This document shows positions 3,946 to 34,500 of a stretch of 44,057 bases of DNA, piece after piece. The stretch is from the NCBI GenBank assembly GCA_013115145.1, contig JAAPAO010000275.1:1-44057 (forward strand). Direction: 5' to 3'. This stretch comes from Perkinsus chesapeaki ATCC PRA-425 (Eukaryota > Protista > Perkinsozoa). Position numbers and translations under genes: made by a program. The notes under the pieces are model-generated. The model was not told where the DNA came from. It did not search any database and saw nothing but the letters and a program-made list of their open reading frames with translations. How positions within the stretch are numbered: the first letter of the stretch is position 1; the number at the start of each line of letters is the position of its first letter.

Positions 3946-4064
3946 TGCTCCAAAAATGACTCTATCACTCGAAACTGGCGAGAGCCAACCTGGAGGGAGA
4001 GAGATAAATTGGTGCGTACGCGATAGAACGCACGAGAGCCGTCTTACATAAAAACGTAGTCTCC

Positions 4065-4084
4065 CTCACTATAAGCACCAAGTT
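4065..4084 (-). other. Candidate primer-binding site upstream of gag
   Basis: Minus strand ..CCCGTCA-ACT-TGGTGCTTATAGTGAG: CA, a 3-nt spacer, then TGG. Priming tRNA not identified. Confidence 0.25.
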
Positions 4085-11050: not shown

Positions 11051-11530
11051 ATGTAACCCAAACTGTTATACAAATTAGTTTTTTTCCACAATTTTTCCAT
11101 TTGGACGAATAGAAACACGAAATTAGAATTGCATCCCAATCATTAAGAATCATACGTATAACAGCCACTACGTTAGTTATCAAGTAATACATGGTTAAGC
11201 CGTGCATTGAATGATACTTCAATATTACATATCAGAAAGTCATAAGGGTTCATTCACATGCATTTAGTCTCAGGATACGGCCCAGAAGGGTTGATGAGCT
11301 CATGCGGGCAACAGTCGGATTAATTTCCAATGAAAGTGATTCCTGTCTCAGAAGTAATGTATTTTATGTTTACTTTTGATCTTGGAACGTATTGCCATTC
11401 TATCTCCTATATATTAGGAACACTGATCCCCGCTAAGACACATTGTATTTTTGTGTCTCAGGCAAATGATCCTTTATTATATTTTGGATATAAATAAATA
11501 ATATTACACTTATACATAACGCATGTTGAG

Positions 11531-13459: not shown

Positions 13460-16100
13460 AAATTTACCTTGGTCGTCTACCAAATTAGACAAAAAATATT
13501 CAACTCATTAATACTAATCGAAAATAATAAATAAAATACTCTCTCCGCGGATCGAACCCACAACCTACCTTTCATCAAAATAAGACGACTCTTCCGAGGA
13601 TTCTTCAACAGCTTCATTTCCCCCAAACCCAATCAACGATGCAATCGTTCCTCTAATAGTTCTCCGAGCTAATAAATAAATCGATCACCTGGGCGAGCGC
13701 TTCTTACCAAACGTCTTACGTATTGTATTTCGCTCCTCAACTTTAGGGGGCATATTCGCCTGAAAATGCGAAACATTTCGCACTTCGCTCCGCTAAGATG
13801 AATACCTTCAATGCCTCGAGTTTCTTTCGACTTGCCTTTGCATTTGCGCGAAGCTGAAATCGATCGCTTGATCGATTTGTTAATCGATTATCCTTTGCTA
13901 CCTTTTTTCTGTATCCACTCGTGCAGCTGAATGCCACCCAAGAGAGGATAAGAATGAAAATTAAAAATGCTATTGTCACCATACGGGTAAATCTGACAGC
14001 AGAAATTTACAGAAAATTTCCGGAAAATTTCAGAAAAAAAGTTTTTTTCAAAAAACTACTTTCTTTCTGATTGGAAAATCGCGTTTCTTTCTTCTCCCTT
14101 TGTATGTTGCTTTGATACACAATCGGAGTCCTCGGAAGTCCACCACGTTGGCAAGTGTAAAAGGAAAAATTTTAAGTTTTTCCGGGAAATTTACGAAAAA
14201 TTGTTTCTTCCATAAGCACTCCCTCTTACCTGACAATCGCTCGCATTGAACAAGATTCTTTGAAGTTCCTGACGAATTCCAAAATGTTACCATCTGAACA
14301 ATCAGTGGCGACTTCTATTTGGCCTTGAGCGTCTCGGGACATGAGAAGCCTGAGGTCGGAGCATGCAAGATACGAAATAGGTCGAGTAAGATATATCACG
14401 CGTGAAGATAGCGAATCTAAGGTTGGAGCATGCACGATACGAAATAGGTCAAGTAAGATATGTCATGCGTGAAGATAGCGAATCTAAGGTTAGAGCGTGC
14501 AAGATACGAAATAGGTCAAGTAAGATATGTCATGCGTGAAAATAGCGAATCTAAGGTTGGAGCGTGCAAGATACGAAATAGGTCAAGTAAGATATGTCAT
14601 GCGTGAAAATAGCGAATCTAAGGTTGGAGAGTGTAAGATACGAAATAGGTCAAGTAAGATATGTCATGNNNNNNNNNNNNNNNNNNNNNNNNNNNNNNNN
14701 NNNNNNNNNNNNNNNNNNNNNNNNNNNNNNNNNNNNNNNNNNNNNNNNNNNNNNNNNNNNNNNNNNNGCGTGAAAATAGCGAATCTAAGGTTGGAGAGTG
14801 TAAGATAGATAGTAGTTCGGGATGAATACTTCCACCTATCCACAAGTGTGCTAGATTACCTAACCCGATAGGTAACAACTTGCTGCCAACAAGTCATATC
14901 CTACGTTGAAGCGTGCAAGATCCATAATGACTCAGACTTACTGCCCTCCTTCACTGCTGGCTGTCAACCCCGGTGTTCCAACCATCCTCCCATTTCCTTC
15001 AACCACCGGAGCCAGAGCGTTATATTCTGAAACTCGCCGAGATCAGAGAAAAGATCGGTATGAGATTTCCTTACGAGTTCGAACGTCGCTTGTCTTGTAC
15101 TTCGGGAGCCGCCAAATAACCGTCTCCGGAAGATCCACTCGCTGAGGGATTAGCTCTGAGGGAAAAAATATTAATCGATCAACTGATCGATTTTACACCC
15201 CTTTCGTCACTTTAAAAATTTGTTTGAAACTTCGAAACATTTCGCGGCAAAACCAACTTCCCATGGAAGATGAGATTCGATGGACATTTCCGGAATTATG
15301 AAGAATAACTGCTTACCTATTCCGGAATCTTCGATCGACACCGGGTCACCTCCGACCAAATGCGGACGTCTTTCGTATCGAACTGGTTTGTCCGATAAGT
15401 CGGTATTCAATAACCGAACAATCAGGGCGCTCCTCCAACCAGCCTGATAAGAGGAAAAGTCACCTATTCCTTCATGATGCACGCTTCAAGCTAGGATTCT
15501 CTCACCTCTGGATCACCAGAAGGACATTCCCCTACTGCTACGCACTCGCAAGATTTGCTCCACATGCAAGTCATATCTAACAATCGAAGGGTCCCGAGTT
15601 CGATCCCGGTGATCATCATTTTACTTTTCTTATTGAAACTGACAAATTCAAAATTGTTCCCCACATGCTCCCGAGTATATTGCGCACAGGCAAGAATCTG
15701 ACAAGATACTCTTACAATCGTCACGCGCCACTTAATTACCGAATCGATTCCTAGTCGGCTCCTCGTGTCAACGTGCCCGGCAAAATCAGGACAAACTCCT
15801 GCTACATCGGGCTGGTCAAATTCTGAAAAATGGCGGAAAGTTTCGGAAGTTGCGAAATGAAGCAAAAAATTTTACAGAACTTTTCCAGAAACGATCATCA
15901 GAAGTGTGATAAGATCTGTACGCGAAAACAGAAAAAAATGTGAAATTGTAAATTTCACTGAAATTCTGCGGGAAAATTTTTCCCCAAAGTTTTCCTCACC
16001 TTTCAGCCGAAGACTCATGACCGCGTTCGCCACGAAATTATACACCACCAGCCGCCTCATAAAAAAGTAATAGCTGCAACAACAGTGAGCCAACAGCGTT
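13460..16100 (-). CDS. Multi-exon membrane protein with a Cys-containing (PAN-like?) region and one TM helix
   Basis: Spliced frame ..GIDS|ILACAQYTREHVGNNFEFVSFNKK|NMTCMWSKSCEC..DPE|AGWRSALIV.. TM segment VTIAFLIFILILSWVAF. Then LK|ANMPPKVEERNTIRKTF|ARRTIRG..SSYFDE. Ends uncertain. Confidence 0.55.
14361..14805. repeat. Minisatellite, 67-bp unit, at least 5-6 copies, with an N gap, derived from intron family A
   Basis: Equivalent positions at 14368, 14435, 14502, 14569 and 14636. Minus-strand unit begins TTGACCTATTTCGTATCTTGCAYGCTCCAACCTTAGAT. Confidence 0.9.
15577..15624 (-). other. Probable intron consisting of an antisense tRNA 3' half (family B)
   Basis: Plus strand CT AAC AA TCGAA GGGTC CCGAG TTCGATC CCGGT GATCATC A TTTT AC. 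On the minus strand this is GTAAAA..TTAG (48 nt, in frame, so not proven by frame). Confidence 0.6.
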
Positions 16101-16250
16101 GAGGAAACACAAGATCCGGCAAGATTGCAAGATTCCCAAGACTAACGCTCATGATCGGCATGAAACGGTATAAGTATAGTACGTACCAAATTACAGTCCT
16201 GAGAAAGCGTTGGGTAAATGCAAGCGCGAGCAAGATTGCAAGATTTACTG

Positions 16251-19200
16251 TTAGAATATGACAATATCAGATTTACTGAGAAGATCCACTCGTCCATCGA
16301 TACCGCCAACAGCCATGTAGTTCGAATTCCGATGTATAGAGAGAAGTGCCGAGCTTGAAGGGGAGTTATTGAATTGACCTAAAAAATATCTTTTGGGATT
16401 GAAAGAGTTAAGGAACAAAAGATATCTTTGAGGTTGAGATTGCAAGATACGTTACAGGTCAACTTTACCTTCTAAAAGAGCTATTTCAGCTTGAGAGTAC
16501 ATGAAACCGTCAGGTATCCTATCTCATGCTTTACACTTACCCTAGAGTTGTCTCATGCGGAAAATATTAAATTGAATAACATTTTTGGTAGGAAAAATCG
16601 ACTGGAATTTCAGCGCTTATATAGCTATTATACCACACAGACGCGCCGCTTCCTCTCTAATAAACTTCCCACAACACCCACAGTTACTAAAGCTAGCGAA
16701 TCAGGGGTGTCATTTGCCTGAGACATAAAAATACAATGTGTCTTAGCGGGGATCAGTGTTCCTAATGCGCAGTAGATAGAATGGCAATACGTTCCAAGAT
16801 CAAAAGTAAACATAAAATACATTACTTCTGAGACAGGAATGACTTTCATTGGAAATCAACCCGAATTTTTCCCGTAACATCTTCCGCGCCCCACTCTGCG
16901 CGGTTAATCGATTACTGCATAGCTAATGCTCCCCCCAAAAAGCTGTAGACCAGAAATAAGCCTTTGTTGAATCTTTTCCCGCCTTGAGTTCATGCCTGTG
17001 AGTGAACCACTAGCAGGTGATGGTGATTATAGTGATAGTGTTAATAAAAAGCAAAGAAGCAATGAGTACTATAAATTTATGATAATGAGCAGTGGGTTTC
17101 CGCGAGCTTCAGGACAGTGCAGCTATAACGGCAAAAAAACCGTTCATCGCGATTTACGGAAAATTATCAATTTTCCGTGAAGTTGAAGCGAAGAACTGAG
17201 TTCTTACGCAGTTGTAAAACTTTGGTGGGCATTTCGAGCCCATCGTCAATCTCGCCAATCGATTCCATACTGAGGCTCTCACTTGATGATTTTAGGGACT
17301 TACGCATATCCCAGAATCTAAAGATACAAAATAGGTTGACTTGGTCAAATAGAGGAAAGATACAAAATAGGTTGACTTGGTCAAATAGAGGAANNNNNNN
17401 NNNNNNNNNNNNNNNNNNNNNNNNNNNNNNNNNNNNNNNNNNNNNNNNNNNNNNNNNNNNNNNNNNNNNNNNNNNNNNNNNNNNNNNNNNNNACAAAATA
17501 GGTTGACTTGGTCAAATAGAGGAAAGATACAAAATAGGTTGACTTGGTCAAATAGAGGAAAGATAGAAAATAGGTTGACTTGATCAAATAGAGGAAAGAT
17601 ACAAAATAGGTTGACTTGGTCAAATAGAGGAAAGATACAAAATAGGTTGACTTGGTCAAATAGAGGAAAGATACAAAATAGGTTGACTTGGTTAAATGCA
17701 GGAAAGATACAAAATAGGTTGTCTTGGTCGAATAGAGGTAAGTAACACACTCCAGCGTATCTTTCGATATCACGCAAAAAAACGGGGTCGGCCTAAGATT
17801 CGGTACAATACATAATCGGGCCGACCTAATATGAAGCCAAAATATCTTCCATTATCATGAAAACCCCGGGTCGACCTAAGATATCCATCAAGTGATGTTC
17901 CAGCAACTTCCCATTGTTCCGCATTCAATCCAGTAACAGCCGCATCGCTTTCATCATCTCCTCCACCAGATACAATATTCGCCTCAATATCAATGCATCT
18001 CACACTTCCATCAGAACAACCAGCGAAAACTGAAAAACAAAAAATGCTTCGCTCCGCTTGGCAAGGAGTATCAAATTTGGAAATTCACTCGACGGATATA
18101 GAACGCTACGTGAAAACTATTCAATAAATTACTCTCAAAATCGAGAACAAAAAACGCTTCGCTCCGCCAGACGTAAACTCAAATTTGTTCAAGACAACGC
18201 CCTTTCGCAGAAAGAAATAATTAGCCTAAATTACTAGCCAAATTTCATCTCTTAAAAGCAAGCCCTTGCTGAAAAACGGGAAACAAAAAACGCTTCGCTC
18301 CGCTCATATCTTACCACACTTTCCTCCATTGGCACTATTTTGTGCTACTTCCAAACAAGTTATCGGTGCACCGGATTCCAATGGAGCAGTTCTGCTGATA
18401 AACTTCCCACTGTGAATATCAACACTCCCGACCGTGCCATCAACAAACCCGATCACTAGCTTGTTACTCACATCAGAGGGGTGCCTGAGCATATCGATCA
18501 CGTGATCGATTGCAACAATCACCGCCAATTGGCCATCAATGAGTTTACCACATTCCAGTGCTTTTCACGGGTTTGTGTGAGCCATTTATTTTTCTCATTT
18601 TCCCGCCTATTTTTACGGGAAAAGGAATTGTGAAAATTTTCAGAATATAAATTTTCCGCTCATTTTTTTTGACCAATTTCCAGCTGATTTCAGAAAATTT
18701 TTCTAGGAGACCTTCCTCGTCGCCGACGAGTCGTCGGCCTCGAAAGCTTCTCCATCCTCCCGAGCACAATTAATTTTAATGAAGGTATTCCCCAAAAGAT
18801 ATGTGCCGTCTTTTAGCTCAAATCAGTTAGACGGACAAGCGTTGCCATAAATACAGTACAACAACACTGATATCAGTAATTACCGATGAAATTATAAACT
18901 TAAAGGACTATAAATTCGATCTTCCTTTCTCCACTCTCAACTTGGCCAACATTATTGCGCTGGCCATGATATGATCTATATCGCAGCGACATACAACGAC
19001 GATCGAATGTGAAGTCGACACCATCATTTTCAAACTATTCCCGCGTTTTTCCCTTTTATCCATTGCCGAACAGAAACTCTTTTCGTCCGGATTTTTCTTT
19101 CAGGCAGAACGCCTGCTTTTAAATTAAAAAATATCTCCCCCACCGGGATCGAACCCGCGACCTTTCGCTTACCAGCACAGCGCGCTCGGCGTGACCGTCT

Positions 19201-22200
19201 TCCCCTCTTCAACCAGCTTGAATCTCTGAGCCAGTAATTGTAAGAATGCCACGTCTTCATTCCCTGGGGAAAAATCCCGGAATTTTTCGGGAAAAAATAC
19301 CTCCATTCGGGGCGGAGACTTTCCAGACGCACGCGGTTCCATCGCTGCTGCTGGTGGCGAGAAGACTGAAAATTAACAACAGGAAAATAATGAAAGAAAA
19401 ATTACCGAAAAGTCACAGGAAATTCGGGAAAATTCTGGACCTCGCGAGAACACTGGAATTGAAGAACTCCAAAAAACTTTCTGAACATTTCATGTGAAAA
19501 AATGAGGAGTCTGACGAAGATTTGCAGGGAAATGTCCAAGCCTACCAATCTTCAGTTTTTCCAAGTCGAACAGACCAAACAGAATCCTCATGTCGGCAAA
19601 CTTCTTCTGTTTTTACAAGAGCGGCAATTTCGCGGCGCGGTGACAAAGCTCTGACCTCTACGCCCGAGGGTGGCAAACGATACATAGATACCTGAAGTAT
19701 ATTCCATTTACAGCTAATTCACCGTCGTAATAATGGAGGATAGTATTAGTGATGGAGTGCCACACTTCCACCTATCTCACCAAGCCCAGCAATATCTTTA
19801 TTAATGCCGTCAATGCCAAAGTCAAATTTCACAAATTATGCAATTAAGGCTAATTTTCATACTATTTTCGACAAGTGATCATTCCGCTGCACTCTATAGC
19901 TCCATACTAGTAATCAGTACTAGTGGGTTAGATCGATCACCAGGGCGCGCGCTTTAGCTCATCTCACCACTCCGTCGGCCCTGCCAGCGATAATCGTTCG
20001 ATCATCTTCCCGATAAGCCATCGAAAGGACACCAGACGCTCCCCCACGAAGACATAACGGATCATCCAACGTGATTCCTAAGAATAGTGATATCTTGCAA
20101 TCTTGCTCCCACTTGCATTTCCTTAACGCTTACCTCGAGGTGAAGTGGTATCGGATTCAGGTTCGATGGAAGTTGGTAGATGCCATACCTTGATAATGGC
20201 ATCTTCTGAGCCTAAATGGGATGCATCTTGCACGCTTCAAGCCCGGATTCTCCAAATCGATCGATGGACCGATTTACTCACCAGTCAATAGAGTCTTTCC
20301 ATCATCCACAACCATACAGCTCCTCACTGCTCCCAAGTGGGCATTTATTCTAGCGGTAGAGCGCCACTCCTTCGAACCCTCTGTTGGCGAACCCGCGCAA
20401 GTTCCATGCCGGGGGGAGGCCTTTTTCAAAGGCGGTGGAAGCGACCCCTAAGATCGAAAGAAATTTCCAGAGGCTCAAGAAATCGCATAAAAAGTATTTT
20501 GGCTGAGTTCAGAGTCAGCGACTTGCATTATACAACGAGGGATATCTGTAGGTCATACAACAAAGAGATGTAATTGAAAAGTGAATCGATTGTCGAAAAG
20601 CGCACGTTCTAGACTAAGCGCACTGCAGTTCTTTCTGTGCCAGGAAATATACTGCGATCACGCGCATCAGTCGGTCGATTGCGAAATCCTATCCTACGGC
20701 TACATTCGATTTCCGACCTCAAAAATATCTTTCTTAAACTCCAATACCACCCACCGACTACGGATTGTAAAAATTTGAGTACCTCATAGAGGTTGAATTT
20801 CCGACCTCTGGAGTATCTTTCTCAAAACCGACTACCCCAAAGCTAAGCTTCAACCTAAGATACCCTTACCGTTTTCAAATTCTCTTTGGTGGGAAATCTC
20901 GCAGCTTGCATCCATGAGGTCGGCGAGGGTGGTGCCTTCACCGCATTAGCCGCCGGACTGAATGAATTCACGTATTCCATGGTGACGATCCTGGTTCGAT
21001 TCCCGGTAGAGGAAGAATCATCAAATTATAATTATTTCCCGTAAATTATATCAATTCATTTCCTCGAGAACGAAACCGTAAATGAAACTTTGGGAAATTT
21101 AAACAGTTTTTCCAATCTCTATTTTTCCTATATTCCGCCCTTCTGCCATTTCCCCACAAGTGATAGATTTGAGTTTTCTGTAATTCAATTATCAATCGTG
21201 AATTTGCAACACTTCATTAATTAATCGAATGGATGTGGAATTCGGAAACAATCCCCATGATCTACTTGGGAATATCTTAGCTCGAAGCCTGCAAGATATA
21301 AAATAGCTCAGCCCTAGTGCCTCACCTTTTCAAAGTATTTCCTGATTTCGGCGACTTCCCTCCACTCTGAAGCCGCGTCGAGTTACCCATCCGAACCCGA
21401 CCCTCGCTTCCGCCAAGACTCGTCCTGCTCGGACTTGATTGCAGACTTTTACGTATGTAACTGGTAAGACTAATATAATCGATCACCTGATCGATTTCCC
21501 AACTTACTCTCTAAATTCATCAGCACTTGCTCTCGCCGAGGCCATTGGAGAGGGATTCTGACTCGACGTTGTGCTACCGAGTGCTCCCAAGTGCGCACGA
21601 AGCGCTTCGACCGGCGAAACCGGAAATGACGAAATCGAAACCGTTTCGCTCCGCTCAGAAATCGGCGGTGTTGCGCTCACTTCTCTATCAATCTCCGAGC
21701 CTGATAAATTGCCAAAAAAACATAGAAATATTTTTTCCGAAATTATCCTTGATAAATATTATTAAAAATTAAATTGAGTAAACTACAGCGAGCGTTACCT
21801 GCCTCCCTCGGCTGAGACGTAAAACGATAAAATCTCTAATGCTGGTGGATGAACGAAATAGACCGGAATTTTCAAAAATTTCCTCAAATTTCCCCCAGAT
21901 TTTTAACATTTTTTTCTGCACCAAAACCTGTAGTCGACCACGCTTGCCTCCCAAGAACACTCCGCATAGTAGATACTTCATCAGAGACTCATCTACCCTC
22001 ACGGATAGATGTTCCTCGTTGACCCAAAACGAGGTGCTCTTAATGCGCAGTAGATAGAATGGCAATACGTTCCAAAACATAAATTACATTACTTCTGGGA
22101 CAGGAGTGACTTTCGTTGGAAATTAGTCCGAATCTTTCCCGCATGAACTTCTGCGACTCCAAAGCTTTCGCATTGAACATCTGGCTCTGCCGTCCAGTAT

Positions 22201-22500
22201 CCAATACCACATAAATTTATAAAAATCAATTTCGACTTCCCGAAAACCGCGCTTAATCACCACCTTCTTTCCGCTGTAAGATCTCCACGGTTGCTCGCTC
22301 CCTTTTCAATGCGAATTCCAACATACTTATCCGTCTCAGATAATCTTCCGCTTTCGCACTCTCAGCCTCGGCCACCTCCTCAGCTTTCTGGCATCTCTTC
22401 ACTAATTCGTATCTTACAAAGATAATTTAACGTGCTCATTTCATCAATACGCCGCTGACTTCTAGAGACTGTATTAACTCTGCCGCACTGCATCTCGAGC
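16251..22500 (-). CDS. STRN: Striatin-like protein (N-terminal coiled coil, C-terminal WD40 repeats), multi-exon; start uncertain
   Basis: DYLRRISMLEFALKRERA is the striatin coiled-coil signature. WD repeats AHLGAVRSCMVVDDGKTLLTG|SEDAIIKVWHL, HEDSVWSVRL, LLATSSSDGTACVWKV, TPSALCW|HPSDVSNKLVIGFVDGTV, VFAGCSDGSVRCID, GTSLDGYLR|FWDM, YMAVGGIDGRVDLL..*. The order matches my recollection of striatin. Confidence 0.8.
17320..17730. repeat. Intronic minisatellite, 36-bp unit, with an N gap, related to the 5' half of family A
   Basis: AGATACAAAATAGGTTGACTTGGTCAAATAGAGGAA repeated. Lies in striatin intron 17318-17875. Confidence 0.9.
18485..19172 (-). other. Striatin intron beginning with a tRNA 3' half (family B) and ending with a family D palindrome
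   Basis: Exon ..CTG|GTAA GCGAA AGGTC GCGGG TTCGATC CCGGT GGGGAGA TATTTTTT. Removal gives the WD-consistent ALCW|HPSD. Confidence 0.8.
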
Positions 22501-22655
22501 TCGGCTTTAACATTTCGAACATGGAAGCACCTCAATTAAGGTCTTCACCAAAACCCTATTGAACCAGTATTATTAAACAAGTAGGTAATAATAACGCTAA
22601 AATATGATGTATAGTATTACTATAGCTCATAAGCAGTATGTAGTAATTGTATACT

Positions 22656-22990
22656 ACTTGTTAGTATACTATACACTGTATTAGCATAGCAGTAAGTATA
22701 CAGTACTTGTTAGTATACTATACACTGTATTAGCATAGCAGTAAGTATACAGTACTTGTTAGTATACTATACACTGTATTAGCATAGCAGTAAGTATACA
22801 GTACTTGTTAGTATACTATNNNNNNNNNNNNNNNNNNNNNNNNNNNNNNNNNNNNNNNNNNNNNNNNNNNNNNNNNNNNNNNNNNNNNNNNNNNNNNNNN
22901 NNNNNNNNNNNNNNNNNNATTAGCATAGCAGTAAGTATACAGTACTTGTTAGTATACTATACACTGTATTAGCATAGCAGTAAGTATACA
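22656..22990. repeat. Tandem repeat, 49-bp unit, with an N gap
   Basis: ACTTGTTAGTATACTATACACTGTATTAGCATAGCAGTAAGTATACAGT at 22656, 22705 and 22754, and again after the gap. Confidence 0.9.
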
Positions 22991-22999
22991 GCCCGAATT

Positions 23000-24600: not shown

Positions 24601-24674
24601 GTTCACGAAAAATCATTCCGGGTCGTATCTTAGCTTGAAGCAAACATGATTCATATCAGGTTAATACGCTGTAC

Positions 24675-25273
24675 ATGTTATCCTTCATTTCCCTTATCGC
24701 CGTCGCTCTCTCTGCACCCAAGCCTGGCCACTACAAGATGATCCAAGGCGATTATAGCTTCAAAAAAATAACCAATATTGAAATCGATATCGCTGATTAT
24801 AAACGTAGGCAGCTCGCCAATCTGACATTTGTTTCTGACACTTCTAGCCGTGAGATCAAGAATGCCCACCTCTGCAAGATGCTTGACAGCTTGAAGGCCC
24901 TTGACTTTCTGACCAGAAAAAATGTGCTACCTTCGCAACCTGCGCCTCCTGCCCTGACCGAGACCAGCAGAGTGATGATTTCAAGCAACTTAAATCAGTC
25001 GGTTCCGGGGATTTGACCTACGTGACGGCTCACGCATCATTCATCTGCGAGGATGGTGACAATATAGCGTTTTTGATCTCCAATTCGCATATGAAGAGCC
25101 CCGATGCTTTCGTACGTGTTAAGCTCGAAAGGGTTCACGACGACCATGAAGATGATAGTAACGAATTTAAAGGGGCAGAAATCGATAGGGTTTACGATGG
25201 CAAGGTTAAAGGTGCTGGAAAAAGAAAAGCTTATACCCCAATTAAATATGTAAAACGTGTAAGAGTGGAATAG
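24675..25273 (+). pseudogene. Intronless secreted-type protein split by a 1-base frameshift
   Basis: Signal peptide MLSFISLIAVALS followed by APKPGHY. A second frame is open from about 24905 (KCATFATCASCPDRD..TYVTAHASFICEDG..VRVE*). The shift maps near the A6 run at 24917-24922. Confidence 0.55.
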
Positions 25274-25460
25274 GCGTGAATGTTATGTAATGATGTAATG
25301 ATGATGTCAATTGTTGATAGTATAATTATCGAGTTCAAGTTCTTTTATTTGGTTAGCTGTGAACAGGCCGGTATCTTTTACCGGTGATGAATGCACTCAT
25401 CAACCTGTGTTACGCACTCTAATGAATTTTGTAGGGAAATATATTATTCTGTTTTTCCCG

Positions 25461-28254
25461 ATGAGCTTGGATGGCAACCAAATCGACGGAGATGATGCGA
25501 GTGATATTTCGAGCGACGGAGAGGAAGTTGTAGAATCACTTGCCCAAGAAATAAGATTTGGAATAAATAATAGCTGGTATCCTGGCTTCAGGCCACCGAG
25601 AGTGTAATAGGAGGGGAGCAATTAACATTTTTTGCATCTTGCACGCTTCAAGCTCAAAGTATCTTCACGATTGATATGCGGAATGAAACTGACCTGTTTA
25701 GCATATTGCACGCTTCAAGCTCGGAGTATCTCTGAGATCGATATGCGAAATGTAACTGACCTGTTTTGCATCTTGCACGCTTTAAGCTGGGAAGTCGAGA
25801 ATATATTTCTCACGCGGTCATCTTGGCAGGTTCTCGACCCTCCCAATTGATGGTTGTCAAGTGATCTGTGCAACCGGTAAGTTTGGGACTGCTCGGGGAA
25901 TGCTACGCAGTGTTGAGGTTCTGGAATCACAGAAGTACTCTTCATAGTTTACACAAGCTACATGAAATCTTATTTATAATTTTCTCCTCTTTCACTCGTC
26001 AGAATTTTCGTTTTTCCCAAAAAAAATTCTAAATTTTCCAGGAAATTTCGTTATTTTTTTCGTGCAGGTATTTTGGATACTTCGGCTTCGGTTGTCAAAC
26101 TCAAGGAGGATAAAGAGTACAATCTTGGATGGCTGGCTAACGTATTCTGGGCATATTTTCGTGGCGCGTGAGAAATGGTCACAGGTTAATTCATCACTGG
26201 TTGCATTGAAGGGAGATTTGCTCGTGCCAGGCTCGAAAGACCTGACTAGTCAACCGAAAGAACACAGTAATAATTATTTGGCGCGCGGGAAAACTTGTCG
26301 AAAGTTTCAAGGTGTTCCCAATGGAAACTCACTATTATGGGAAAATATGTCAGATTTTTGCCTTTGAAAAGAAATCCATTTCGTTCCCAATGAAAAAGCT
26401 TTCCGGTAAAACTGCGAATTGAAAAACGCCGATTGGATACGTACTGAAAATTGTGAAAGGAATTTAGTATGAATAAAGCAGGCTATTTTAGCAGGCAAGT
26501 AAATCTGTTTAGTTCGATATAGTTCGATATTTTTCGGGAAAAAACTTGGTGAAATTTTCCGATTTTTTTGTCAGTTTTACGGGTATGGGATGACGGTAAA
26601 GTAAACGTGATTGTTCCAAAGAACCAAGTCAAGCCGATGAGAATCTTCCTGGATAACTCTTCTTGGGTGATTTCAAGCTCTGGCGGCGACCCGTAAGATA
26701 TCTTTTTGCACGCATGCACACGAAGATATTTCTCAAGTTACGTTCCGCTACCTTCGTTGAGTGAGGACGATGTTGGTCCGCAGCTGGCTGGAAGGCTGTT
26801 GAAGGAGCAATCGAGCGAATGGCCAATTTGTTATTGCAAAGTCGGCAATTGGGTCATGCTCAGCGGTACTAAGGACGTGGGTTCAATCCCGGGGAGGGAC
26901 ATTTTACCCCAAACTCGAAATTGATAAGGTTGCCTGAGGGGAAGAAGACCCGAAAAAACAGGGGAATCGATCTCTCGCTCTCCAAGGCTATTAGATTGTA
27001 TTCTTCCCGTCCGAACTGAACGGTGTATTTTCAAGCTAATCGGGTTCACTTTTTGACTTGAGCATTTTTAGTATTTATTAGACTACAGGACGTCCTTGCT
27101 TGGCTATGTCCAAGCATGAGATATGAAATATTATCAGTTTTAATTTCTTTTGAAGATTTACGGTTGCGGAGGAGTATCATCATTCAGTGGTGTCAGAAGT
27201 TACGCAATCAATTCTCATCGCCCTCTGATTTGCCTCCATTAAATCGTCGTCACATTAGAAGCACTTTTCATCGAGTACATAATTGTTATCAATTTATCGA
27301 AGCAATAACTTAATATTAAACCTTCTCCAAGAACTCATCAGTCCAAGTTGGTATTAGGCTATCTGTGATGATGATTTGTATTTGGCGATTCATATAATGC
27401 AATACTTTATGTGGTACTCTGTTTACCTTGGAAATTGATAGTGATGTATGTTTGCACGCATGCGCATTTCTCAGGGTCGATATTTGATTATGATGAAAGA
27501 TATGAATCGATTGTAAGAGGGAGGCTACCAGAAGGATGTCGACCAGCGACGGCGGTTAAGTTACCAGTTACACATGGAGGAATGGTTAGTGAATGTAAGG
27601 GTATCTTAGGTTGAAGGATGCAAGATGCATTTGAGGTTGAAAATAGAATTCGAGGTTTAAAATAAAAAAAGATACTCTTGAAATTGAAAATAAAAGATAT
27701 CTGAGGTTGAAAAAAGATACTTTTGAGGTTGCAAATAAAAGATACTTTTGAGGTTGAAATGAAGAGATGTTTCCAGGTTAGAAAGGAGTACTTCATAATT
27801 AAATGACATTCAGGTACAGTTTGGTCAGATGGCATTATTACGATAAATGCAGGTGTGTATTCTCAAGCTAAGAAACAAACTTCTGAGTAAGTCACGAAGT
27901 AAAACGTATCTTTTACAAGTTAACCTATTTCTTATCTTTTACAAGTTAACCTATTTCGTATCTTTCACAAGTTAACCTATTTCGTATCTTTTATAAGATA
28001 ACCTATTTCGTATCTTTTGCAAGTTAACCTATTTCGTATCTTTTGCAAGTTAACCTATTTCGAATCTTTTTAGTCCTAATAAAAATAAGACTATCACATA
28101 CCTCAAGCGCGGTACCGTGTCACTTAATACTGTTCGGTTCTTCGTGGATGAGGGAGAAAGACTCGACCTTTATGAGGGTTTTGCTCATGTACTGCCGGGA
28201 TGGGAGGAGTTTGATAGGAAATATGTTACTAGTGATACGGAGGAGGAGATATAA
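25461..28254 (+). CDS. Multi-exon protein with an LPxGCRP (phage tail-fibre-like) beta domain
   Basis: MSLDGNQID..NSW|FSTLPIDGCQVICAT|GILD..WLAN|VNSS.. then CYCKVGNWVMLSG|SIFDYDERYESIVRGRLPEGCRP..GTVWSDGIITIN..GTVSLNTVRFFVDEG. Frames restored by GT-AG introns; 3' end ambiguous. Confidence 0.55.
25625..25790 (+). repeat. Three tandem family A copies with a 67-bp period (intronic)
   Basis: TTGCACGC cores at 25639, 25706 and 25773. Confidence 0.85.
27905..28070. repeat. Intronic minisatellite, 26-bp unit, about 6 copies (family A 5' half)
   Basis: AAGTTAACCTATTTCGTATCTTTTGC at 27917, 27943 and onward. Confidence 0.9.
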
Positions 28255-28474
28255 TAGAAAGGAGTTTGATAGGAAATATGTTACTAGTGATACGGAGGAG
28301 ATATAATAGAAAGGAGTTTGATAGGAAATATGTTACTAGTGATACGGAGGAGGAGATATAATAGAAAGGAGTTTGATAGGAAATATGTTACTAGTGATAC
28401 GGAGGAGGAGATATAATAGAAAGGAGTTTGATAGAAAATATGTTACTAGTGATACGGAGGAGGAGATATAATAG
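28205..28474. repeat. Tandem repeat, 55-bp unit, 5 copies
   Basis: AGGAGTTTGATAGGAAATATGTTACTAGTGATACGGAGGAGGAGATATAATAGAA at 28205, 28260, 28312, 28367 and 28422. Confidence 0.9.
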
Positions 28475-28526
28475 AGTGACTCTTCTTGCGTACGGAAATT
28501 CGTGACGTTTTGAAGTTGTTTGTTAG

Positions 28527-31500
28527 TTACATGCTAGACCACAGAACTACATCAAAGATAAGGATGCTAAGAGTGGTAAGTTGACCTATCGTGTATCTTG
28601 CACGCATCAAGCTCAGGAGAATCTTCGGAATGCAATGAAGATTCGGACTCTGACAGCGAAGGTGACGAATGGTATCTTACGGGAGACAACTCGCCCGGAG
28701 GAATCTCGATTGCAACCGCGACCGCGCGCCACGATATTGGCGATCTGGAGACCTCGGCAAGCACTGCTGAGGTTGAAGCTGGTAAGTGCGAATCTTTATA
28801 GTACGAAAGATACGTGAAGTGTTATTAGATGTTACGGGTGGAGTTAGGGTGTCGATGTGTGGTGGATTGGTGATGTTGCAAGGAAGCTGTACATATGTGG
28901 ATACACATTCCGGAAAGGGGGAAGGTACGTTAACATCTCAGGTATCTTGCATGCTTCAAGCTAAGATATCTCTCTCAGTTACCCAGTCGGAAGATGATCG
29001 AGTTGGAATTGCTCAACTTCCGATGCATTTGGCTCCCTCGACCACTACTATACATTACGTCTACGGAAACAGTAAGAAAAACCTTCGCAGTGCGCAAAGC
29101 GTATCCCATTCAGTGCGCAGGTCGTATCTTATAATAGATATTCCCATCCTTGGAAAACTTTGTGGTGCGGTGAGCGTATCTTAGCACTTAATCAATAACG
29201 ATGAATTATATCCGGTCACAGAAATCTCACGTATTTCAGAAAGGAAAATTTATTCCTTTTTTGCAAATTTTCCGCAATTTTAGGTTTTCACTGCCAAGAT
29301 AATTTTTTGACGGACTCGGAAGATTTTTGATTGGTCTCAGATAAATGGAGCAGGGAAAGAATCGAGATCGACCCGACTGGAAAAATTATGAGTTGCAGCG
29401 CGAAGACTAGAACGCTACATAAGAGAACCGAACTCTCTGGCATAGTGTTCGTAAGTTAACCTTTCGTGTATCTTACATGCATTAAGCTAAGATACTATAT
29501 TGAACTTTTAGGCGCCGCGGTCGAGCCTTGCGAAAGATGATGGACTCTTGGATGACGCCGCAGGGCTAGAGGTGGCGACAGGCTCACGAAGTAAGGTGTA
29601 CCTCGAGGTTAAGCGTGCATCCCACAGGTTAAAAGATACTCCTGTCTCAGATGGCGAGATTCCAACCGCCTTATGCGCTGGGAAGTTCGCAGAGGATTTG
29701 AGCAGGCAAGATTGGAAGGATATCCTGGAAGAAGTTACATCGTAAGTTATTTTGCTTCCTGCGCGCTTCAAGCTTGGATATTCCTAGGGCATACGAAGAC
29801 GCACTTGAACGTCGACATGTTAAAGAGAAATATCCGAAATGCGAAGATGACCGGAAATCGTTCTCGTTCGATGTGAATCAAGAATTTATAAAGTAAGATG
29901 ATTCTCTTCGTTTCTGGTGAGAGCGCTTCATTGCCTTCAGATACGGAAAGGATCATCGAAGGGAAGAATCGGAAGATTGGCGGTTGAAAATGGAGAGGAC
30001 GAGTCGGGTAAGGTCGTGGGTTCGATACTCGGTCTTGGCATTTTTCCGGGATTTTTCAGAATTTTCCTAGAAGAGATTTTCACAGTGCAGCAGATCCGTC
30101 GATGATGACGATTTTAGCTGATCGAATTGCGAACGAATTGTAAGATTCGGAATAGATTGATGTGAGGCCCTTAGATATCTTGGGTTGAAGCGAGGTTTTT
30201 TGGAAATGGTGTCATTTATTTCTCTGCGAAGTATGTAGTTTTTCACAAAAAATGAGGAAGTTTACGAAGAAGTATTTTTCCTCAAGAAGGAAATTATTAT
30301 CGAGACTCCAGCGTGAGGAAGTATCTTAGCTTGAAGCATGCTTTGTGAACATGTCTGGCTGAATCTCATTACATGATCAGGGAGAATTTCTATTTTCCCA
30401 AGTACAAATTGCCAGTTGAAAGTGATTGGGAAAACGTGAAAGATGAAACGCTCCGCTCCGCTAGATATAGAGCGACTGGATTAAAAAAGCGAGTTGACGG
30501 GCTTCGAGAAATCATTGAGAGATATGGAAGCACGAATGATTCGCAGGATAATGGAGGAGGAAACGCTCAAGCTTTGAGGGTAACGTATATTGTATCTTGC
30601 ATGCTTCAACCTAAGATACTCCGTGTCAGGCACTTAGGCACTTTGGCGAGCAGCAACAACAAGGCAACTGGAAACTAAGTCCGCGTGCTTTGGCCTTGCC
30701 TCAAGTGAGCGGAGCGAAGCGTTTCTTATTTCATTTCTTGTGCTTCGCTCCGCTAGTGTATTATTTTTCACTTTTTAGTTGCGAAGTCTGAAGAACGCTG
30801 ATAAGGAGACTTTCGATAAATTCATGGAGGTGAGCAGTTGGTCAAAAAAACGAAAAATCCGACCTCCTTTGATTGCAACCTCATTCGTGGAAAATTCATT
30901 TAGGCAAGTTGTTTTGGATTTTTTTCCTCATTTTTTCCAGGAACTAGCGAATTTTCCGTTTTTGGCAGATACAGGAGTGGTGGCTTGGTTTCGATACAAA
31001 TGAGAAAGTGTTGACACACAGCACTCTGATGGGCAACAAAGATGCATTTTCGTGCAGGTAAATTTATCGTCTAATGTAGGCTCGGAAAAGTTATTAAAAG
31101 GCCCATTTTACTGGGTCACCTTGTAGCTTTGTCGCCTACATTGCCCGATTGACTAAACTCACCACTGGAACTGTTTCCCAATGCAAATATATGATAGAAG
31201 CTTTATGTACCTCAACAGACGTTCCAACGCTAGTGGAGATTGGTTTACTCAGACTAGCGACAGCAGTCACTTATAGAGTATTTTAATCTGTGTTCTTCTT
31301 CTGGCTCCTCGGTGGCTAGAATCCTTTCTTACCTTAAGTGTAGCTCATTAACCTGTGTTCTTCTTCTGGCTCCTCGGTGGCTTGAATCTTTTCTTCCCTT
31401 GAATGTATCTCCTTATGTCTGACATATCTGAATTATTTCTATTTCAGTGGCAAGTGGCGCATCCCTGATGATCCGAGCGTCCAGAAGGCGTTGTTCTACA

Positions 31501-34500
31501 ACAAGGCGTGGTTGTATAAGCATGGCGTGCACACGTATATTTCGGAAATACAAACACCAATGTAAGAATCTTCCGGCAACTAGTTTCCAATCTTTCTGGT
31601 CGGAGTGTGGGCGAGCGAAAGGACGATTTTGGCGTGTCACCATCATCTGCTGAGATCATCATTTTCCATGGCATTTCTTTCGAAATTTCTCTCGCAATTT
31701 TCCCGATTTTTTCTTTCTCTAAATCAGTCTCATCTTGGAATTTTTGGGGAATTTGTCGGGAATTTCTGTCAGTTTTCGGAGATTTTTTTGTAGTCCAAAA
31801 TTTTCCAACATTTTTCCGAATTTTTTGCTCTTCTTCAGTTTCCCATTCATAGAAGATATCGATTTCGAAGGAACATTCCACGACATTGAAGGCTCAGGCG
31901 ATTTGGATACGATCATCTTGGACGAGAATTTAATGTTCTTGAAAGAGTAAGAAAAATACCCCCACCGAGGATCGAACTCGGGTCCTTTCGATTACCAGAC
32001 GGGTACAAGCGTTGCATTTATTCTTCCCCGATTTGGACAAGTTCAAATGCCACGTCTATTCGGCGTCGGGATACAATAAAGGAAAGGAGCGATGGAAGAG
32101 TTCATTTCATTTAGTATGGCCTGATTTGATAGTAGATGGAACAATGGCACCAACGATGAGGTGAGCGTTAGGGAAATCCAAGATTCAGCAAGAGTGGCAA
32201 GATTTTAGGAATGTTACTGTTGAGCATTTTGAGGACTTGACGAGGAGGGATCCTTATTTTAAATTGATGTAAGCGGGAGTTGAACCGGGGGTTGGATGGT
32301 TTCGAAAAACAGTCTGGTGCTCTACCGCTGGAGTATTTGGGAAGTAAATGGTTCGTGGATGATGATATCCACGAGAATTGAAGGAATGACATCAATCTGG
32401 TGGACACGTCTCTGGATTTTTCATATTTCAAAAATTACCAAAAGAATGTATCTTTGGGATTCTTTCAGGTTCAAAAGAATGATGAGATTTTTCGATCAGA
32501 ATATTTGGGAAAATGTCTTTGATCAAACCACAGCGAGTGCCAAGAATGGTTTGAGAATGCCTTTCTGTAGGTCGCGGGTTCGATCCTCGGTGGGGGCGTT
32601 TTTAAATTGATTTGTGTGTATTTTCAGGTAACAAAGTTTCGTGGCATAAAGACGCCGAGGGAAGGAAACAACCGAGAGTTGAGGATCGCTTCTCGCTGCC
32701 GATTGGTAGGTTGAAGCTTGCACCTTCTACGTGAGAAAGATACGACTTTAAAAATGATAGGCAGTAGGGTCGCGTATCTTACGTTTAAGGATGCTTCCCA
32801 CATTTTTTAAAGATACGCTAATCCGAGGTCACTCTCATAATTGAGTATCTTAGGTTGAAGCTCGCTTTTGACTTCTTTCTCTCCAGGAACTATCGAGTTT
32901 GAATATACACGGAAAGAAATCGGTCCAAAAGAATTGGAAAGATATCGCCGGGACGAACAGAAAAGGTTCGATCAGGCGGAGAACGATTTCAAAGAGAGAT
33001 TACAGTAATTGACCTATGTTGCATCTTGCACGCTTCAAGCTAGGATATTTCAGTGCTTCTAAGGATTACCGAGATATCCAAGGTGATCGAACCTCAGCCC
33101 ACACGAGCGACAAGACTTCCATGGATAGAAGTTTGGCATTTGCCAAGGCTTTGAGGAAAATAGGCGGAGGTAGCCTGGTGTAAATCTTGCTAAATCTTGC
33201 TTAATCTCAACGTTCGAATCAGATCCACGGTATTTGACTGACTTGAAGGCTCGTTGGATAACGGGGCCGTTGAAGAAGGACGAACTGAGAGATATGGATA
33301 TAGAAACAATAGCGGAATGGATTGCTCGAGGTAACTTACTATATATCTTGCATGCTTCAAGTTAAGATATGCTTCTCAGGTTCCTGTCGGAGAGGCCAGT
33401 ACACCACTGATGATGTGACCACGTAGGGAAAAACTTTTCTTCCGCAAATTTTACCGAAATTTTTTTCAGCCCCAACGCAGATTTCGTAAAAGCCTACGAA
33501 GAAGCAGATTTCGAATTGATAGAGGAAATAGGTCGGTGTCGTTGACGTAAAAAGCGCACGCCCAGTTGATCGATTTCAGGCCTGGATGCAATTAAGGAGA
33601 CTGACAAGTGGAAGAAAATGACGCCGTGTGCCCAGAAGGGTGTGCTTGTTAGATTTCAACAGTGAGTGGGGAATTTGGTGTTTTTTCCGGGGAAAAATTA
33701 ACTTTGTGTTGTCAGTAATTTGCCAAAATTTCAACGTTTTCGAGAAAAAAATCGTTTAGATTCTTGGAAGGAATTATTCTGTCGGGAAATTTTCGGAAAT
33801 TTCAGTGTCTCTCTTGAGTTTTCAGGGAATGTTCCGTGGCGCCGGAAATTATTTTGATTTTTATTGTAGGTATCGGCAGAGCCGAGGGCTTTCTACGGAG
33901 GGAATAACAGTGCGAACGTCGAAGAATAAGAATAGGGGGAAAAAGAAGGTAACTTGTTTTGTATCCTGCATGCTTCAACTTTGGATACGTCTCAGAAGAC
34001 TAAGGAGAACAGTCAGACTACTGTTCAAGAAGAGGAAGAAGTGAGATGTTTTGGCGTGGCGAAGTCTGGTCAACTGACGTCCTCTGAAATTAGGTGAAAC
34101 CACCGACGGGACGATCTGGATTCGATTTCGATTATTACAAGCGAGGCAAGGATAATGGAGGGGAATCTTGTATATGGAGGTAAAAAACTCTACTCCTTTC
34201 GTATCTTGCACGCTTCAAGCTAAGATTCTCCGACACCTGTACGGAATTCAAAAAGAAATTCAACGAAGGGCTTATGGACCAGGATTTCGTTGCATCGGTA
34301 AGCGTGGTAAATCCATCACGTAATCGATCATGTAATCGATCTCGTTTTCAGGGCTTCGGGGCTCTACGAAGTTGTCTCAATCACCCTTTCGGCTGTTCCT
34401 GGTCGAGGAATCGGAATGGCCGCGGAGTTGTGTGGAGATCTCCACCGGAGAAGGATTTGGGAGATATGGGATTTTATAATTCTGACGTAAGATACGAAAT

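What the first reader, a model, noticed from the sequence alone, without database searches (positions are those of the whole stretch)
13514..32627. Spliceosomal introns made from tRNA-gene 3' halves, with the anticodon loop used as splice site in both orientations
Seen: at least seven introns carry a tRNA 3' portion in correct geometry (variable loop AGGTC/AGGAC, T-arm GGTTCGATCC-like, 7-nt acceptor strand, discriminator) directly followed by TTTT(T), a Pol III terminator pattern. They are 13514-13568(-), 15577-15624(-), 18485-19172(-), 26866-(+), 30008-30059, 31947-31998 and 32567-32627. No 5' halves or A-boxes precede them. Three copies keep CT-NNN-AA-(T/G)CGAA. In the sense copy at 19172 the GT of anticodon GGT is the donor. 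In the antisense copies (31998, 15577) the complement of C32-T33 is the acceptor AG and the donor lies just past the T-run. Three junctions are fixed by conserved protein motifs (AEP motifs, striatin WD). Inference: a tRNA-half-derived SINE or introner that creates removable introns either way round, copied from tRNA genes or pre-tRNA since there is a terminator and no CCA. Alternatives are intronic B-box (TFIIIC/ETC-like) chromatin sites or split-tRNA pieces. I know of no description of this.
Basis: partly seen in the sequence, partly recalled or inferred. Interest (0 to 1): 0.9.

Follow-up and report, generated by a model that had tools for sequence, protein, structure and literature searches.

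The report
Old tRNA-gene tails forming tiny introns
In this Perkinsus parasite several very short introns consist almost entirely of the leftover back end of a transfer-RNA gene. These leftovers are ancient and their core has stayed near one consensus, so they are not freshly jumping elements, and I found no description of this in the literature.

Summary
The tRNA-like pieces are real and far above chance. GGTTCGATCC with at most 1 mismatch occurs 14 times against 2.6 expected. A model built only from a P. olseni locus finds all seven claimed pieces, none in shuffled windows, and the pooled model finds none in 70.8 kb of dinoflagellate loci.

- **Junctions:** four of seven are confirmed by protein continuity with orthologues (30008-30059, 31947-31998, 32567-32627, 15577-15624). 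18485-19172 is in frame and fits a WD repeat, but that is inference. 13514-13568 is unverified. 26866 is not supported.
- **Anticodon loop as splice site:** this holds for three long-form copies. Other copies fuse the donor to the variable loop or abut the T arm.
- **Age:** the pieces sit in the same introns of P. olseni or P. marinus although 4-fold sites are saturated (27-30% identity). The variable loop and T arm (B box) stay at consensus in both orientations, while the acceptor strand decays.
- **Context:** this is one of several intron-core families, found in 16% of 82 introns.

Best reading: ancient tRNA-gene 3' relics under constraint, possibly TFIIIC/B-box sites. An active SINE or introner is unlikely. 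No usable RNA-seq was available. The scan has reported the same phenomenon before on other pieces of this genome.

The parts
30008..30059 (+). 52-nt intron of the AEP primase-like gene. It holds a sense tRNA 3' piece (30010-30044), with the donor GTA fused to the variable loop AGGTC.
   Evidence: Spliced alignment to P. marinus protein P0063 is continuous across the junction. The orthologous P. marinus intron L002 12624-12767 also begins with a sense piece. HMM E=1.4e-6.
31947..31998 (+). 52-nt intron filled by an antisense tRNA piece covering positions 32-73 plus the T run. The acceptor AG is the complement of C32-T33, and the donor GTAAG lies just past the A run.
   Evidence: Junction ..LMFLKE|RVQALHLFFPDLD (AEP motif I) is continuous in P0001 and in dinoflagellate homologues. 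The P. olseni orthologue L001 758-1133 keeps the piece at the acceptor. HMM E=3e-8.
32269..32468 (+). 200-nt intron whose 5' end is an antisense T arm abutting the donor, followed by a decayed D-arm-like stretch (to about 32345).
   Evidence: Junction confirmed by P0001. P. olseni intron L001 1412-1662 begins with the same antisense T arm.
32567..32627 (+). 61-nt intron holding a sense tRNA piece (32569-32602), with the donor GT directly before AGGTC.
   Evidence: Split codon T|GT gives ..GLRMPFC|NKVSW, continuous in P0001 and its paralogues. P. olseni intron L001 1761-1992 starts with the same piece. HMM E=3.7e-7.
15577..15624 (-). 48-nt intron of a small secreted-protein-like gene, filled by an antisense piece that resembles tRNA-Val (anticodon loop CTAACAA). 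The acceptor is the complement of C32-T33.
   Evidence: P. olseni protein P0085 lacks exactly these 16 codons. Spliced alignment agrees. Orthologous intron L005 634-686 keeps the antisense piece.
18485..19172 (-). Probable 688-nt intron of a WD-repeat gene. A sense long-form piece (19130-19172) sits at its 5' end, and the donor GT is G35-T36 of the former anticodon loop.
   Evidence: Read-through hits a stop at once (TGG TAA). Splicing is in frame (TG|G) and restores WD-repeat geometry. No orthologue or RNA evidence was found, so this is inferred.
13514..13568 (-). Putative 55-nt intron holding a sense piece (13533-13566), with the donor GT before AGGTT and a 3' end reading TCGATTAG.
   Evidence: The sequence fits the family. 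The junction is not verified, and splicing would give a 4-codon last exon.
26871..26905 (+). tRNA 3' piece that is not at a demonstrable intron boundary.
   Evidence: HMM E=2.9e-7. The flanks are not conserved with P. marinus, and the upstream conserved ORF ends at a stop at 26694-26696.
36450..36503 (+). Probable 54-nt intron of the SF3A3-like gene, holding a degraded sense piece.
   Evidence: HMM E=0.11. The orthologous P. olseni site L001 about 6550-6595 has a clear piece (E=1.1e-6) with conserved flanks.
37899..38209 (+). Probable 311-nt SF3A3 intron containing a decayed full-length tRNA-like sequence (37918-37985) with both an A box and a B box.
   Evidence: The A box (TAGTCTAGTGG) lies 30-60 nt upstream of the B box. 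The orthologous introns in P. olseni and P. marinus keep a decayed tRNA-like stretch with the D-arm/A-box-like TAGTGTAGTGG. By the strict A-plus-B regex the pair is called in P. olseni but not in P. marinus.
1552..1627 (-). Nearly full-length tRNA-like relic.
   Evidence: Rfam tRNA 20.9 bits, below the gathering score. A box plus B box. HMM E=4e-6.
20991..21012 (+). Isolated T-arm/B-box-like piece with no T run.
   Evidence: HMM E=0.015; 0.0049 with the P. olseni-only model. Context not resolved.

Best explanation
These are genuine short spliceosomal introns of a Perkinsus species whose bodies are relics of the 3' part of tRNA genes. The relic comprises the anticodon-loop or variable-loop side, the T arm (which is the Pol III B box), the acceptor 3' strand, the discriminator and the oligo-T terminator.

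Shown:
- The relics are ancient. The same introns carry them in at least one of P. olseni or P. marinus, although synonymous sites between the species are saturated.
- About 20 nt (variable loop plus T arm) stays at one consensus in every copy and in both orientations relative to the host gene. The acceptor strand drifts toward randomness.
- The pre-mRNA does not fold unusually well.
- Each piece lies at an intron end. Ancestrally the tiny intron was essentially the piece, and longer orthologous introns are the same intron expanded by internal insertions.
- The former anticodon loop supplies the splice site only in a long-form subfamily that looks Val-like. Other copies use GT fused to AGGTC.
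- The tRNA family is one of at least four conserved core families that together mark about three quarters of the introns examined.

Inferred:
- tRNA-gene-derived DNA entered genes in either orientation before the Perkinsus species split, and only copies that could be spliced out exactly survived.
- The retained core now acts at the DNA level, most plausibly as a TFIIIC-binding B box (ETC-like), or it is kept uniform by gene conversion.
For: Enrichment and specificity.

Junctions.

Orthologous retention: w31947 with L001 1085-1133; w32567 with L001 1761; w30008 with L002 12624; w15577 with L005 634-686; w36450 with L001 6550.

Saturation: 4-fold identity is 27% (window vs P. olseni), 30% (window vs P. 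marinus) and 53% (P. olseni vs P. marinus), with similar third-position composition.

Region-wise identity, orthologues vs non-orthologous cross-species pairs:
- T loop: 0.84 vs 0.82
- T-stem halves: 0.74 vs 0.61-0.65
- Acceptor strand: 0.49 vs 0.32

Other measurements:
- T-stem pairing falls from 96% (53-61) to 46% (49-65).
- A T run of 4 or more follows position 73 in 17 of 28 copies, and none has CCA.
- Both orientations are conserved.
- Fold z-scores run from -0.8 to +0.3.
- Full-length relics keep an A-box-like D-arm motif at tRNA spacing from the T arm in orthologous introns of three species.
- Family census of 82 introns: T 16%, P 38%, G 15%, F 10%, none 26%.
- None of the four tRNA-type introns of the AEP gene is at a position shared with Symbiodinium or Effrenium homologues.
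Against: - There is no RNA-seq for any junction. Confirmation rests on annotated orthologue proteins and homologue continuity.
- TFIIIC binding is untested. Seven of 18 P. olseni/P. marinus copies have A at position 54, a departure from the B-box consensus that makes a perfect palindrome (CCGGATCGATCCGG). That could point to another factor or to a DNA/RNA hairpin.
- All tiny introns, not only the tRNA type, are conserved (interior identity 0.65 against a 0.5 baseline). The constraint may therefore be a general property of tiny introns, not B-box specific.
- Content can change within a fixed intron position. P. olseni has a 53-nt tRNA-type intron where the window has a 277-nt intron without one. 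The SF3A3 intron has a T piece plus a W module in P. olseni and P. marinus but only the W module here. So the pieces need not have created their introns.
- The sample is small: five genes and 28 pieces.
Confidence: 0.55

Rival explanations
1. Active or recent tRNA-half SINE or introner. A mobile element copied from tRNA genes or pre-tRNA inserts in either orientation and creates a new, exactly removable intron each time.
For: - Tiny introns equal the piece.
- Copies sit in at least five unrelated genes in both orientations.
- Almost no AEP intron position is shared with dinoflagellate homologues (1 of 30).
- Two neighbouring window copies (31953-31987 and 32569-32602) are about 86% alike, including the acceptor strand (by eye).
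- Possible species-specific states at positions 54 and 66.
Against: - The introns and their pieces are shared across species with saturated synonymous sites.
- Mean identity between copies is about 0.55.
- I noticed no target-site duplications or terminal repeats, though this was only by eye.
- No A box, so no Pol III promoter for retroposition.
- No intron presence/absence difference was seen among the three species at tRNA-type positions.
- The distance from piece to splice site varies.
Confidence: 0.12
2. RNA-level role. The T-arm-like hairpin in the pre-mRNA helps recognise or splice tiny introns, or recruits a T-arm-binding enzyme (a Pus4/TruB-type or Trm2-type enzyme).
For: - The pieces sit at intron ends.
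- The inner T-stem pairs are kept (96% and 86%).
- One orthologous pair shows a two-sided change, A52-T62 to G52-C62.
- All intron families have palindromic cores.
- Tiny introns are conserved in general.
Against: - Antisense copies are conserved equally, yet would present a different loop.
- Fold energies equal those of shuffled sequences.
- The outer stem pairs decay to 46-61%.
- The inner pairs are also B-box positions, so they say nothing specific about RNA structure.
Confidence: 0.15
3. Homogenisation without function. Frequent ectopic gene conversion, from the several hundred tRNA genes or among intronic copies, keeps the T-arm region tRNA-like.
For: - In the T arm, orthologues are barely more alike than any two copies (0.74-0.84 vs 0.61-0.82).
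- A54 occurs in 7 of 18 P. olseni/P. marinus copies and 0 of 10 window copies. T66 predominates in the window and C66 in the other two species.
Against: - The species-specific signals rest on two positions out of about 40 and are not significant after correction.
- Conversion tracts would have to stop at the T arm and spare the acceptor strand.
- No true tRNA gene was available for comparison.
Confidence: 0.13
4. Chance, or convergence of splicing signals (GTAGGT donor, polypyrimidine tract) with tRNA features; or functional split-tRNA halves.
For: In sense copies AGGTC overlaps the donor consensus and the T run can serve as a polypyrimidine tract. TCGATT-N-AG also ends some introns without a tRNA piece.
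Against: - Multi-part geometry with E values down to 1e-8, 0 hits in shuffles and 0 in dinoflagellate loci.
- Antisense copies carry the same features.
- Full-length relics exist.
- For split tRNAs: the acceptor strands are decayed and variable, no 5' halves are present, and neither ARAGORN nor Rfam calls any of them.
Confidence: 0.03

Closest known systems
Introner elements (Micromonas, Aureococcus, fungi, dinoflagellates; Amoebophrya introners, PMC7789003)
   Same: Families of introns with shared sequence occur in unrelated genes. Each short intron is essentially one unit. Intron positions are mostly lineage-specific.
   Different: The copies here are old and divergent and are shared between species. 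No terminal inverted or direct repeats were seen. The unit is a tRNA-gene 3' end, and its core is still conserved. Canonical GT-AG is used.
Extra-TFIIIC (ETC) sites and tDNA-derived B-box elements of yeasts and mammals (from general knowledge)
   Same: A B box stands alone, without an A box or a functional tRNA. It is conserved and orientation-independent.
   Different: The sites here lie inside tiny introns at their ends, in large numbers, with a retained oligo-T and variable loop. Occupancy is unknown. One subfamily departs from the consensus at position 54.
tRNA-derived SINEs
   Same: tRNA ancestry, dispersal through genes, and frequent intronic location.
   Different: SINEs carry the tRNA 5' part with A and B boxes plus a LINE-related or A-rich tail. 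These pieces carry only the 3' part with a Pol III terminator, and no tail or duplications.
Dada DNA transposons that target tRNA genes in P. marinus (Kojima and Jurka 2013, PMC3706591)
   Same: Same genus. They show that tRNA genes are abundant and are a substrate for mobile DNA there.
   Different: Dada elements are 4.7-11 kb, insert into tRNA genes (the target-site duplication TAGCTC matches D-arm sequence, by my reading), and are not intron bodies. I found no sequence link.

Membership tests
Spliceosomal intron | GT-AG boundaries whose removal restores a continuous, conserved reading frame | tested here: met
   Four of the seven claimed junctions (plus 32269-32468) by spliced alignment to orthologue proteins. 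One more is in frame with WD continuity. 13514-13568 is unverified and 26866 is not supported.
Spliceosomal intron | Junction reads in RNA | tested here: inconclusive
   Only two tiny RNA contig sets were available. Nothing was laid across any junction.
tRNA gene or pseudogene (3' part) | Variable loop, T arm with TTCGA-type loop, 7-nt acceptor strand, discriminator and Pol III oligo-T in the correct spacing | tested here: met
   Alignment A1 and 28 HMM hits. A73 in 22 of 28; a T run in 17 of 28; TCGA..C invariant.
tRNA gene or pseudogene (3' part) | Complete cloverleaf detectable by tRNA finders | tested here: not met
   ARAGORN calls none of them. Rfam tRNA gives only a sub-threshold hit at 1556-1627.
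tRNA-derived SINE | Internal Pol III promoter with an A box and a B box at the 5' end | tested here: not met
   Only 2 of 29 B-box matches in the window have an A box 30-60 nt upstream, and none of the seven does.
tRNA-derived SINE | LINE-related or A-rich 3' tail and target-site duplications | tested here: not met
   The pieces end in a T run. No flanking duplications were seen by eye at the confirmed junctions. No formal search was made.
Introner element | Many similar copies, each coinciding with one intron, in unrelated genes | tested here: met
   Copies lie in confirmed, probable or putative introns of the AEP, SF3A3, WD-repeat and small secreted-protein-like genes of the window. Further copies lie within a U1-70K-like gene of the related loci, where intron status was not checked. 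They are divergent, however (about 0.55 identity).
Introner element | Recent gain: intron presence/absence between close relatives | tested here: not met
   tRNA-type introns are at shared positions in the species that could be compared. Only the content differs.
ETC-like TFIIIC site | Conserved B-box consensus without a functional tRNA | tested here: met
   The core is held at consensus across saturated divergence in both orientations. Caveat: an A54 subfamily exists.
ETC-like TFIIIC site | TFIIIC occupancy without Pol III | not testable with these tools
   This needs ChIP or CUT&Tag in Perkinsus.

The most novel reading that the evidence does not exclude
Perkinsus genes are threaded with a small vocabulary of conserved, mostly palindromic intron cores. 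One of these is the tRNA B box with its terminator. The cores are kept by selection because introns double as DNA-level docking sites (TFIIIC and other factors) that organise chromatin or transcription in an organism with trans-splicing and few defined promoters. On this reading the tRNA relics originally founded the introns they occupy.
Probability: 0.25. Interest if true: 0.9.

Novelty: new variant of a known kind. Interest (0 to 1): 0.68.

Why it matters
If the reading holds, it ties three fields together: intron origin, Pol III/TFIIIC elements outside tRNA genes, and genome organisation in the perkinsid-dinoflagellate lineage. A tRNA gene's 3' end already offers usable splice signals in both orientations: GT in or next to the anticodon or variable loop, a T run that can act as a polypyrimidine tract, and CT/AC complements. 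That gives a concrete route by which short DNA insertions could become exact introns.

Retention of the B-box core over saturated divergence also makes a functional test possible in P. marinus, which I understand can be transfected. Practically, gene finders and tRNA or repeat annotators for Perkinsus should expect these motifs inside introns.

Tried and rejected
- **RNA-seq:** the two runs listed hold about 4 Mb of short contigs, and none lay across any junction.
- **Rfam and ARAGORN:** neither recognises the pieces. The single ARAGORN 'tRNA-His' at 4008-4081 does not look like a tRNA.
- **Homologue search for the WD-repeat gene:** nothing found, so the 18485-19172 junction stays inferred. 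Pfam on single exons was mostly uninformative.
- **RNA structure:** rejected as the main explanation, because fold energies equal those of shuffles.
- **Dada transposons:** considered as the source of the tRNA halves and rejected. They insert in what I read as the D-arm region and are kilobases long.
- **Reverse-splicing spread:** rejected as a sole mechanism, because antisense copies exist.
- **Codon-bias shift as the cause of low 4-fold identity:** rejected, because third-position composition is similar in the three species.
- **Literature:** six of the seven searches aimed at a prior description found none.
- **tRNA-Val resemblance:** the match of the long-form pieces to tRNA-Val (..CTAACAC GCGAA AGGTC CCCGG TTCGAAA CCGGG..) is recalled from memory. 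I could not test it against Perkinsus tRNA genes, because none was in reach.

Full report
**Organism and setting.** The window encodes proteins 72-86% identical to P. olseni and P. marinus proteins. Earlier notes of the scan name the genome Perkinsus chesapeaki; I did not check that name. Genes are dense and broken by many tiny introns. My spliced aligner places 30 introns in the primase-like gene (Pfam AEP_C962R) between 28542 and 35191, most of them 44-61 nt long.

**The assembly gaps.** The three gaps (14669-14767, 17394-17492, 22820-22918) each abut a tandem array, with periods of 67, 36 and 49 nt. They reflect unresolved array length. None overlaps a claimed intron.

- GGTTCGATCC with at most one mismatch occurs 14 times against 2.56 expected, and no shuffle out of 100 reaches 14.
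- Aligned in tRNA sense, the copies share the variable loop AGGTC, a T arm, a 7-nt acceptor strand, A at the discriminator and a T run.
- An nhmmer model iterated on the window and three related Perkinsus loci finds 28 pieces at E<0.12.
- A model built only from the P. olseni locus recovers all seven claimed pieces (E from 1.3e-5 to 0.13) and finds nothing in ten shuffled windows. The pooled model finds 19 hits at E<0.01 in 89.8 kb of Perkinsus DNA and none in 70.8 kb of dinoflagellate homologue loci.
- A T run of at least four follows position 73 in 17 of 28 copies, and none has CCA. The source was therefore gene or precursor sequence, not mature tRNA.

**Are they introns?** No usable RNA-seq exists, so I used protein continuity.
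- A representative search with the AEP core exon found the P. olseni orthologue P0001, and a homologue search with P0001 then found the P. marinus orthologue P0063 and dinoflagellate and transcriptome homologues. I fetched the orthologous loci L001 and L002.
- Spliced alignment confirms 31947-31998 (..LMFLKE|RVQALHLFFPDLD, AEP motif I), 32567-32627 (split Cys codon..MPFC|NKVSW) and 32269-32468. It also confirms 30008-30059.
- For 15577-15624(-), the P. olseni protein P0085 lacks exactly those 16 codons.
- For 18485-19172(-), read-through meets a stop immediately. The proposed splice is in frame (TG|G) and restores a WD repeat. I found no orthologue, so this is inference.
- 13514-13568(-) is unverified.
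- 26866 is not supported. The conserved upstream ORF ends with a stop at 26694-26696, and the 1.1 kb that follows is not conserved with P. marinus.

**The anticodon-loop claim.** Three long-form copies keep CT-NNN-AA-(T/G)CGAA.
- In the two verified antisense copies (31998 and 15577) the acceptor AG is the complement of C32-T33, and the donor lies just beyond the A run.
- In the inferred sense copy (19172) the donor GT is G35-T36.
- In P. olseni the first arrangement is kept (L001 1133). In the second the acceptor is displaced by a 4-nt insertion (L005 686).
- Other geometries are at least as common. The donor GT is fused to the variable loop in four window copies and several orthologues. An antisense T arm abuts the donor at 32269, L001 1412 and L001 8263. 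A decayed full-length tRNA sits inside a long intron (37899-38209).
- No A box precedes the seven pieces, but two other window copies have one.

**Age and constraint.**
- Four-fold degenerate sites are 27% identical between the window and P. olseni, 30% against P. marinus, and 53% between those two species. Third-position composition is similar in all three, so the first two comparisons are saturated.
- Even so, the orthologous introns keep the piece (five window-versus-relative pairs and two olseni-marinus pairs).
- Region by region, orthologues are no more alike than any two copies in the T loop (0.84 vs 0.82) and only slightly more in the T stem (0.74 vs 0.61-0.65). The acceptor strand has fallen to 0.49 against a 0.32 family background.
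- T-stem pairing declines outward from 96% to 46%.
- The tiny tRNA-type introns fold no better than shuffled sequences, with z from -0.8 to +0.3.
- Sense and antisense copies are conserved alike.

Together this points to a constraint, or a homogenising process, centred on the variable loop and the T arm (the B box). It acts independently of the transcript strand.

**Caveats to the B-box reading.**
- Seven of 18 copies in P. olseni and P. marinus have A at position 54, which makes a perfect palindrome.
- All tiny introns are conserved, not only these (interior identity 0.65 against about 0.5 for unrelated or shuffled pairs).

**Context that changes the picture.** Orthologous introns of the three species fall into a few sequence families. 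By simple motif tests on 82 introns, 38% carry a hairpin-like core of the type TATCTTGCAYGCTTCAACCTAAGATA, which is also the unit of local minisatellites. The tRNA type accounts for 16%, a GGCGGAGCGAAG / TGATCGATTT type for 15%, and a TTTCCGGGAAA type for 10%. 26% carry none. The tRNA relics are thus one member of a wider system of conserved intron cores.

**Origin.**
- Only one of 30 AEP intron positions, and none of the four tRNA-type ones, coincides exactly with an intron in the Symbiodinium pilosum or Effrenium voratum homologues.
- The pieces sit at intron ends. Longer orthologous introns look like the tiny intron expanded by internal insertions (L001 758-1133 against window 31947-31998).
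- Content can also change at a fixed position. P. olseni has a 53-nt tRNA-type intron (L001 597-649) where the window has a 277-nt intron without a piece. One SF3A3 intron holds a T piece plus a GTGGCGCGCG module in P. olseni and P. marinus, but only that module here.
- Whether the pieces founded their introns or entered existing ones is therefore open. I found no sign of recent mobility.

**Literature.** Searches for Perkinsus with introns, tRNA, introner or SINE found no description of this. The nearest item is the report of Dada transposons that target the abundant tRNA genes of P. marinus (PMC3706591). Several earlier follow-ups of this scan, on other pieces of the same genome, reached the same general reading. 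I treated those as leads and repeated the key tests here.

**Verdict.**
- The tRNA ancestry and the splice-site coincidences are real.
- The active SINE or introner mechanism is not supported.
- The best current reading is ancient tRNA-gene 3' relics, kept near consensus at the B box inside tiny introns, with function unproven.

Noticed in passing
window 28573-28616, 29451-29511, 29742-29787, 30580-30629, 33005-33053, 33331-33379, 33949-33995, 35099-35145 and others; arrays 14353-14668, 25630-25792: The commonest intron core (38% of 82 introns) is a hairpin-like unit of about 28 nt, of the type TATCTTGCAYGCTTCAACCTAAGATA. It occurs in both orientations, is conserved at orthologous introns of three species, and is also the unit of the 67-nt minisatellites.
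   Followed up: partly
window 30705-30778, 33532-33579, 34041-34093, 18485-18520; L002 14313-14677: A second intron core family combines GGCGGAGCGAAG (often as an inverted pair) with TGATCGATTT or the palindrome AAATCGATCACGTGATCGATT close to the acceptor. The ATCGAT core recurs in the P. olseni variant of the tRNA pieces.
   Followed up: partly
window 15698-15739(-), 37757-37804(+); L001 339-482, 8263-8337: A third core, AATTTYGTGGCGCGCG, contains TTTCGCGC on the opposite strand. From memory, that matches the E2F site consensus. It recurs in introns of unrelated genes and species.
   Followed up: no
window 28542-35191(+): A primase-like gene (Pfam AEP_C962R) with at least 30 introns. It has homologues of about 1,100 aa in dinoflagellates and marine transcriptomes. 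Only one of the 30 intron positions is shared exactly with the Symbiodinium or Effrenium homologues.
   Followed up: partly
window vs L001 tiny introns (e.g. 33949-33995 vs L001 3590-3636): The interiors of orthologous tiny introns are 51-81% identical (mean 65%), while 4-fold sites of the same gene are at 27%. Tiny introns as a class therefore seem constrained.
   Followed up: partly
T pieces in window vs L001/L002/L005: There are possible species-specific states. A at position 54 occurs in 7 of 18 P. olseni/P. marinus copies and 0 of 10 window copies. T at position 66 is common in the window and C in the other species. This hints at concerted evolution but is not significant after correcting for the number of positions.
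   Followed up: partly
window 11341-11386(+) and 16793-16838(-): An identical 46-nt hairpin-like sequence occurs twice in opposite orientation, 5.4 kb apart. It was picked up as weak mir-1000 matches (26.4 bits, below threshold).
   Followed up: no
window 4008-4081(-): ARAGORN's only call, tRNA-His with anticodon ATG, does not look like a canonical tRNA and is probably a false positive.
   Followed up: partly
L002 14676-14766 and 16342-16432; 15550-15673 and 17541-17664: The P. marinus locus holds the same AEP exons twice and contains N runs. This looks like a local duplication or an assembly artefact, and it limits comparisons there.
   Followed up: no
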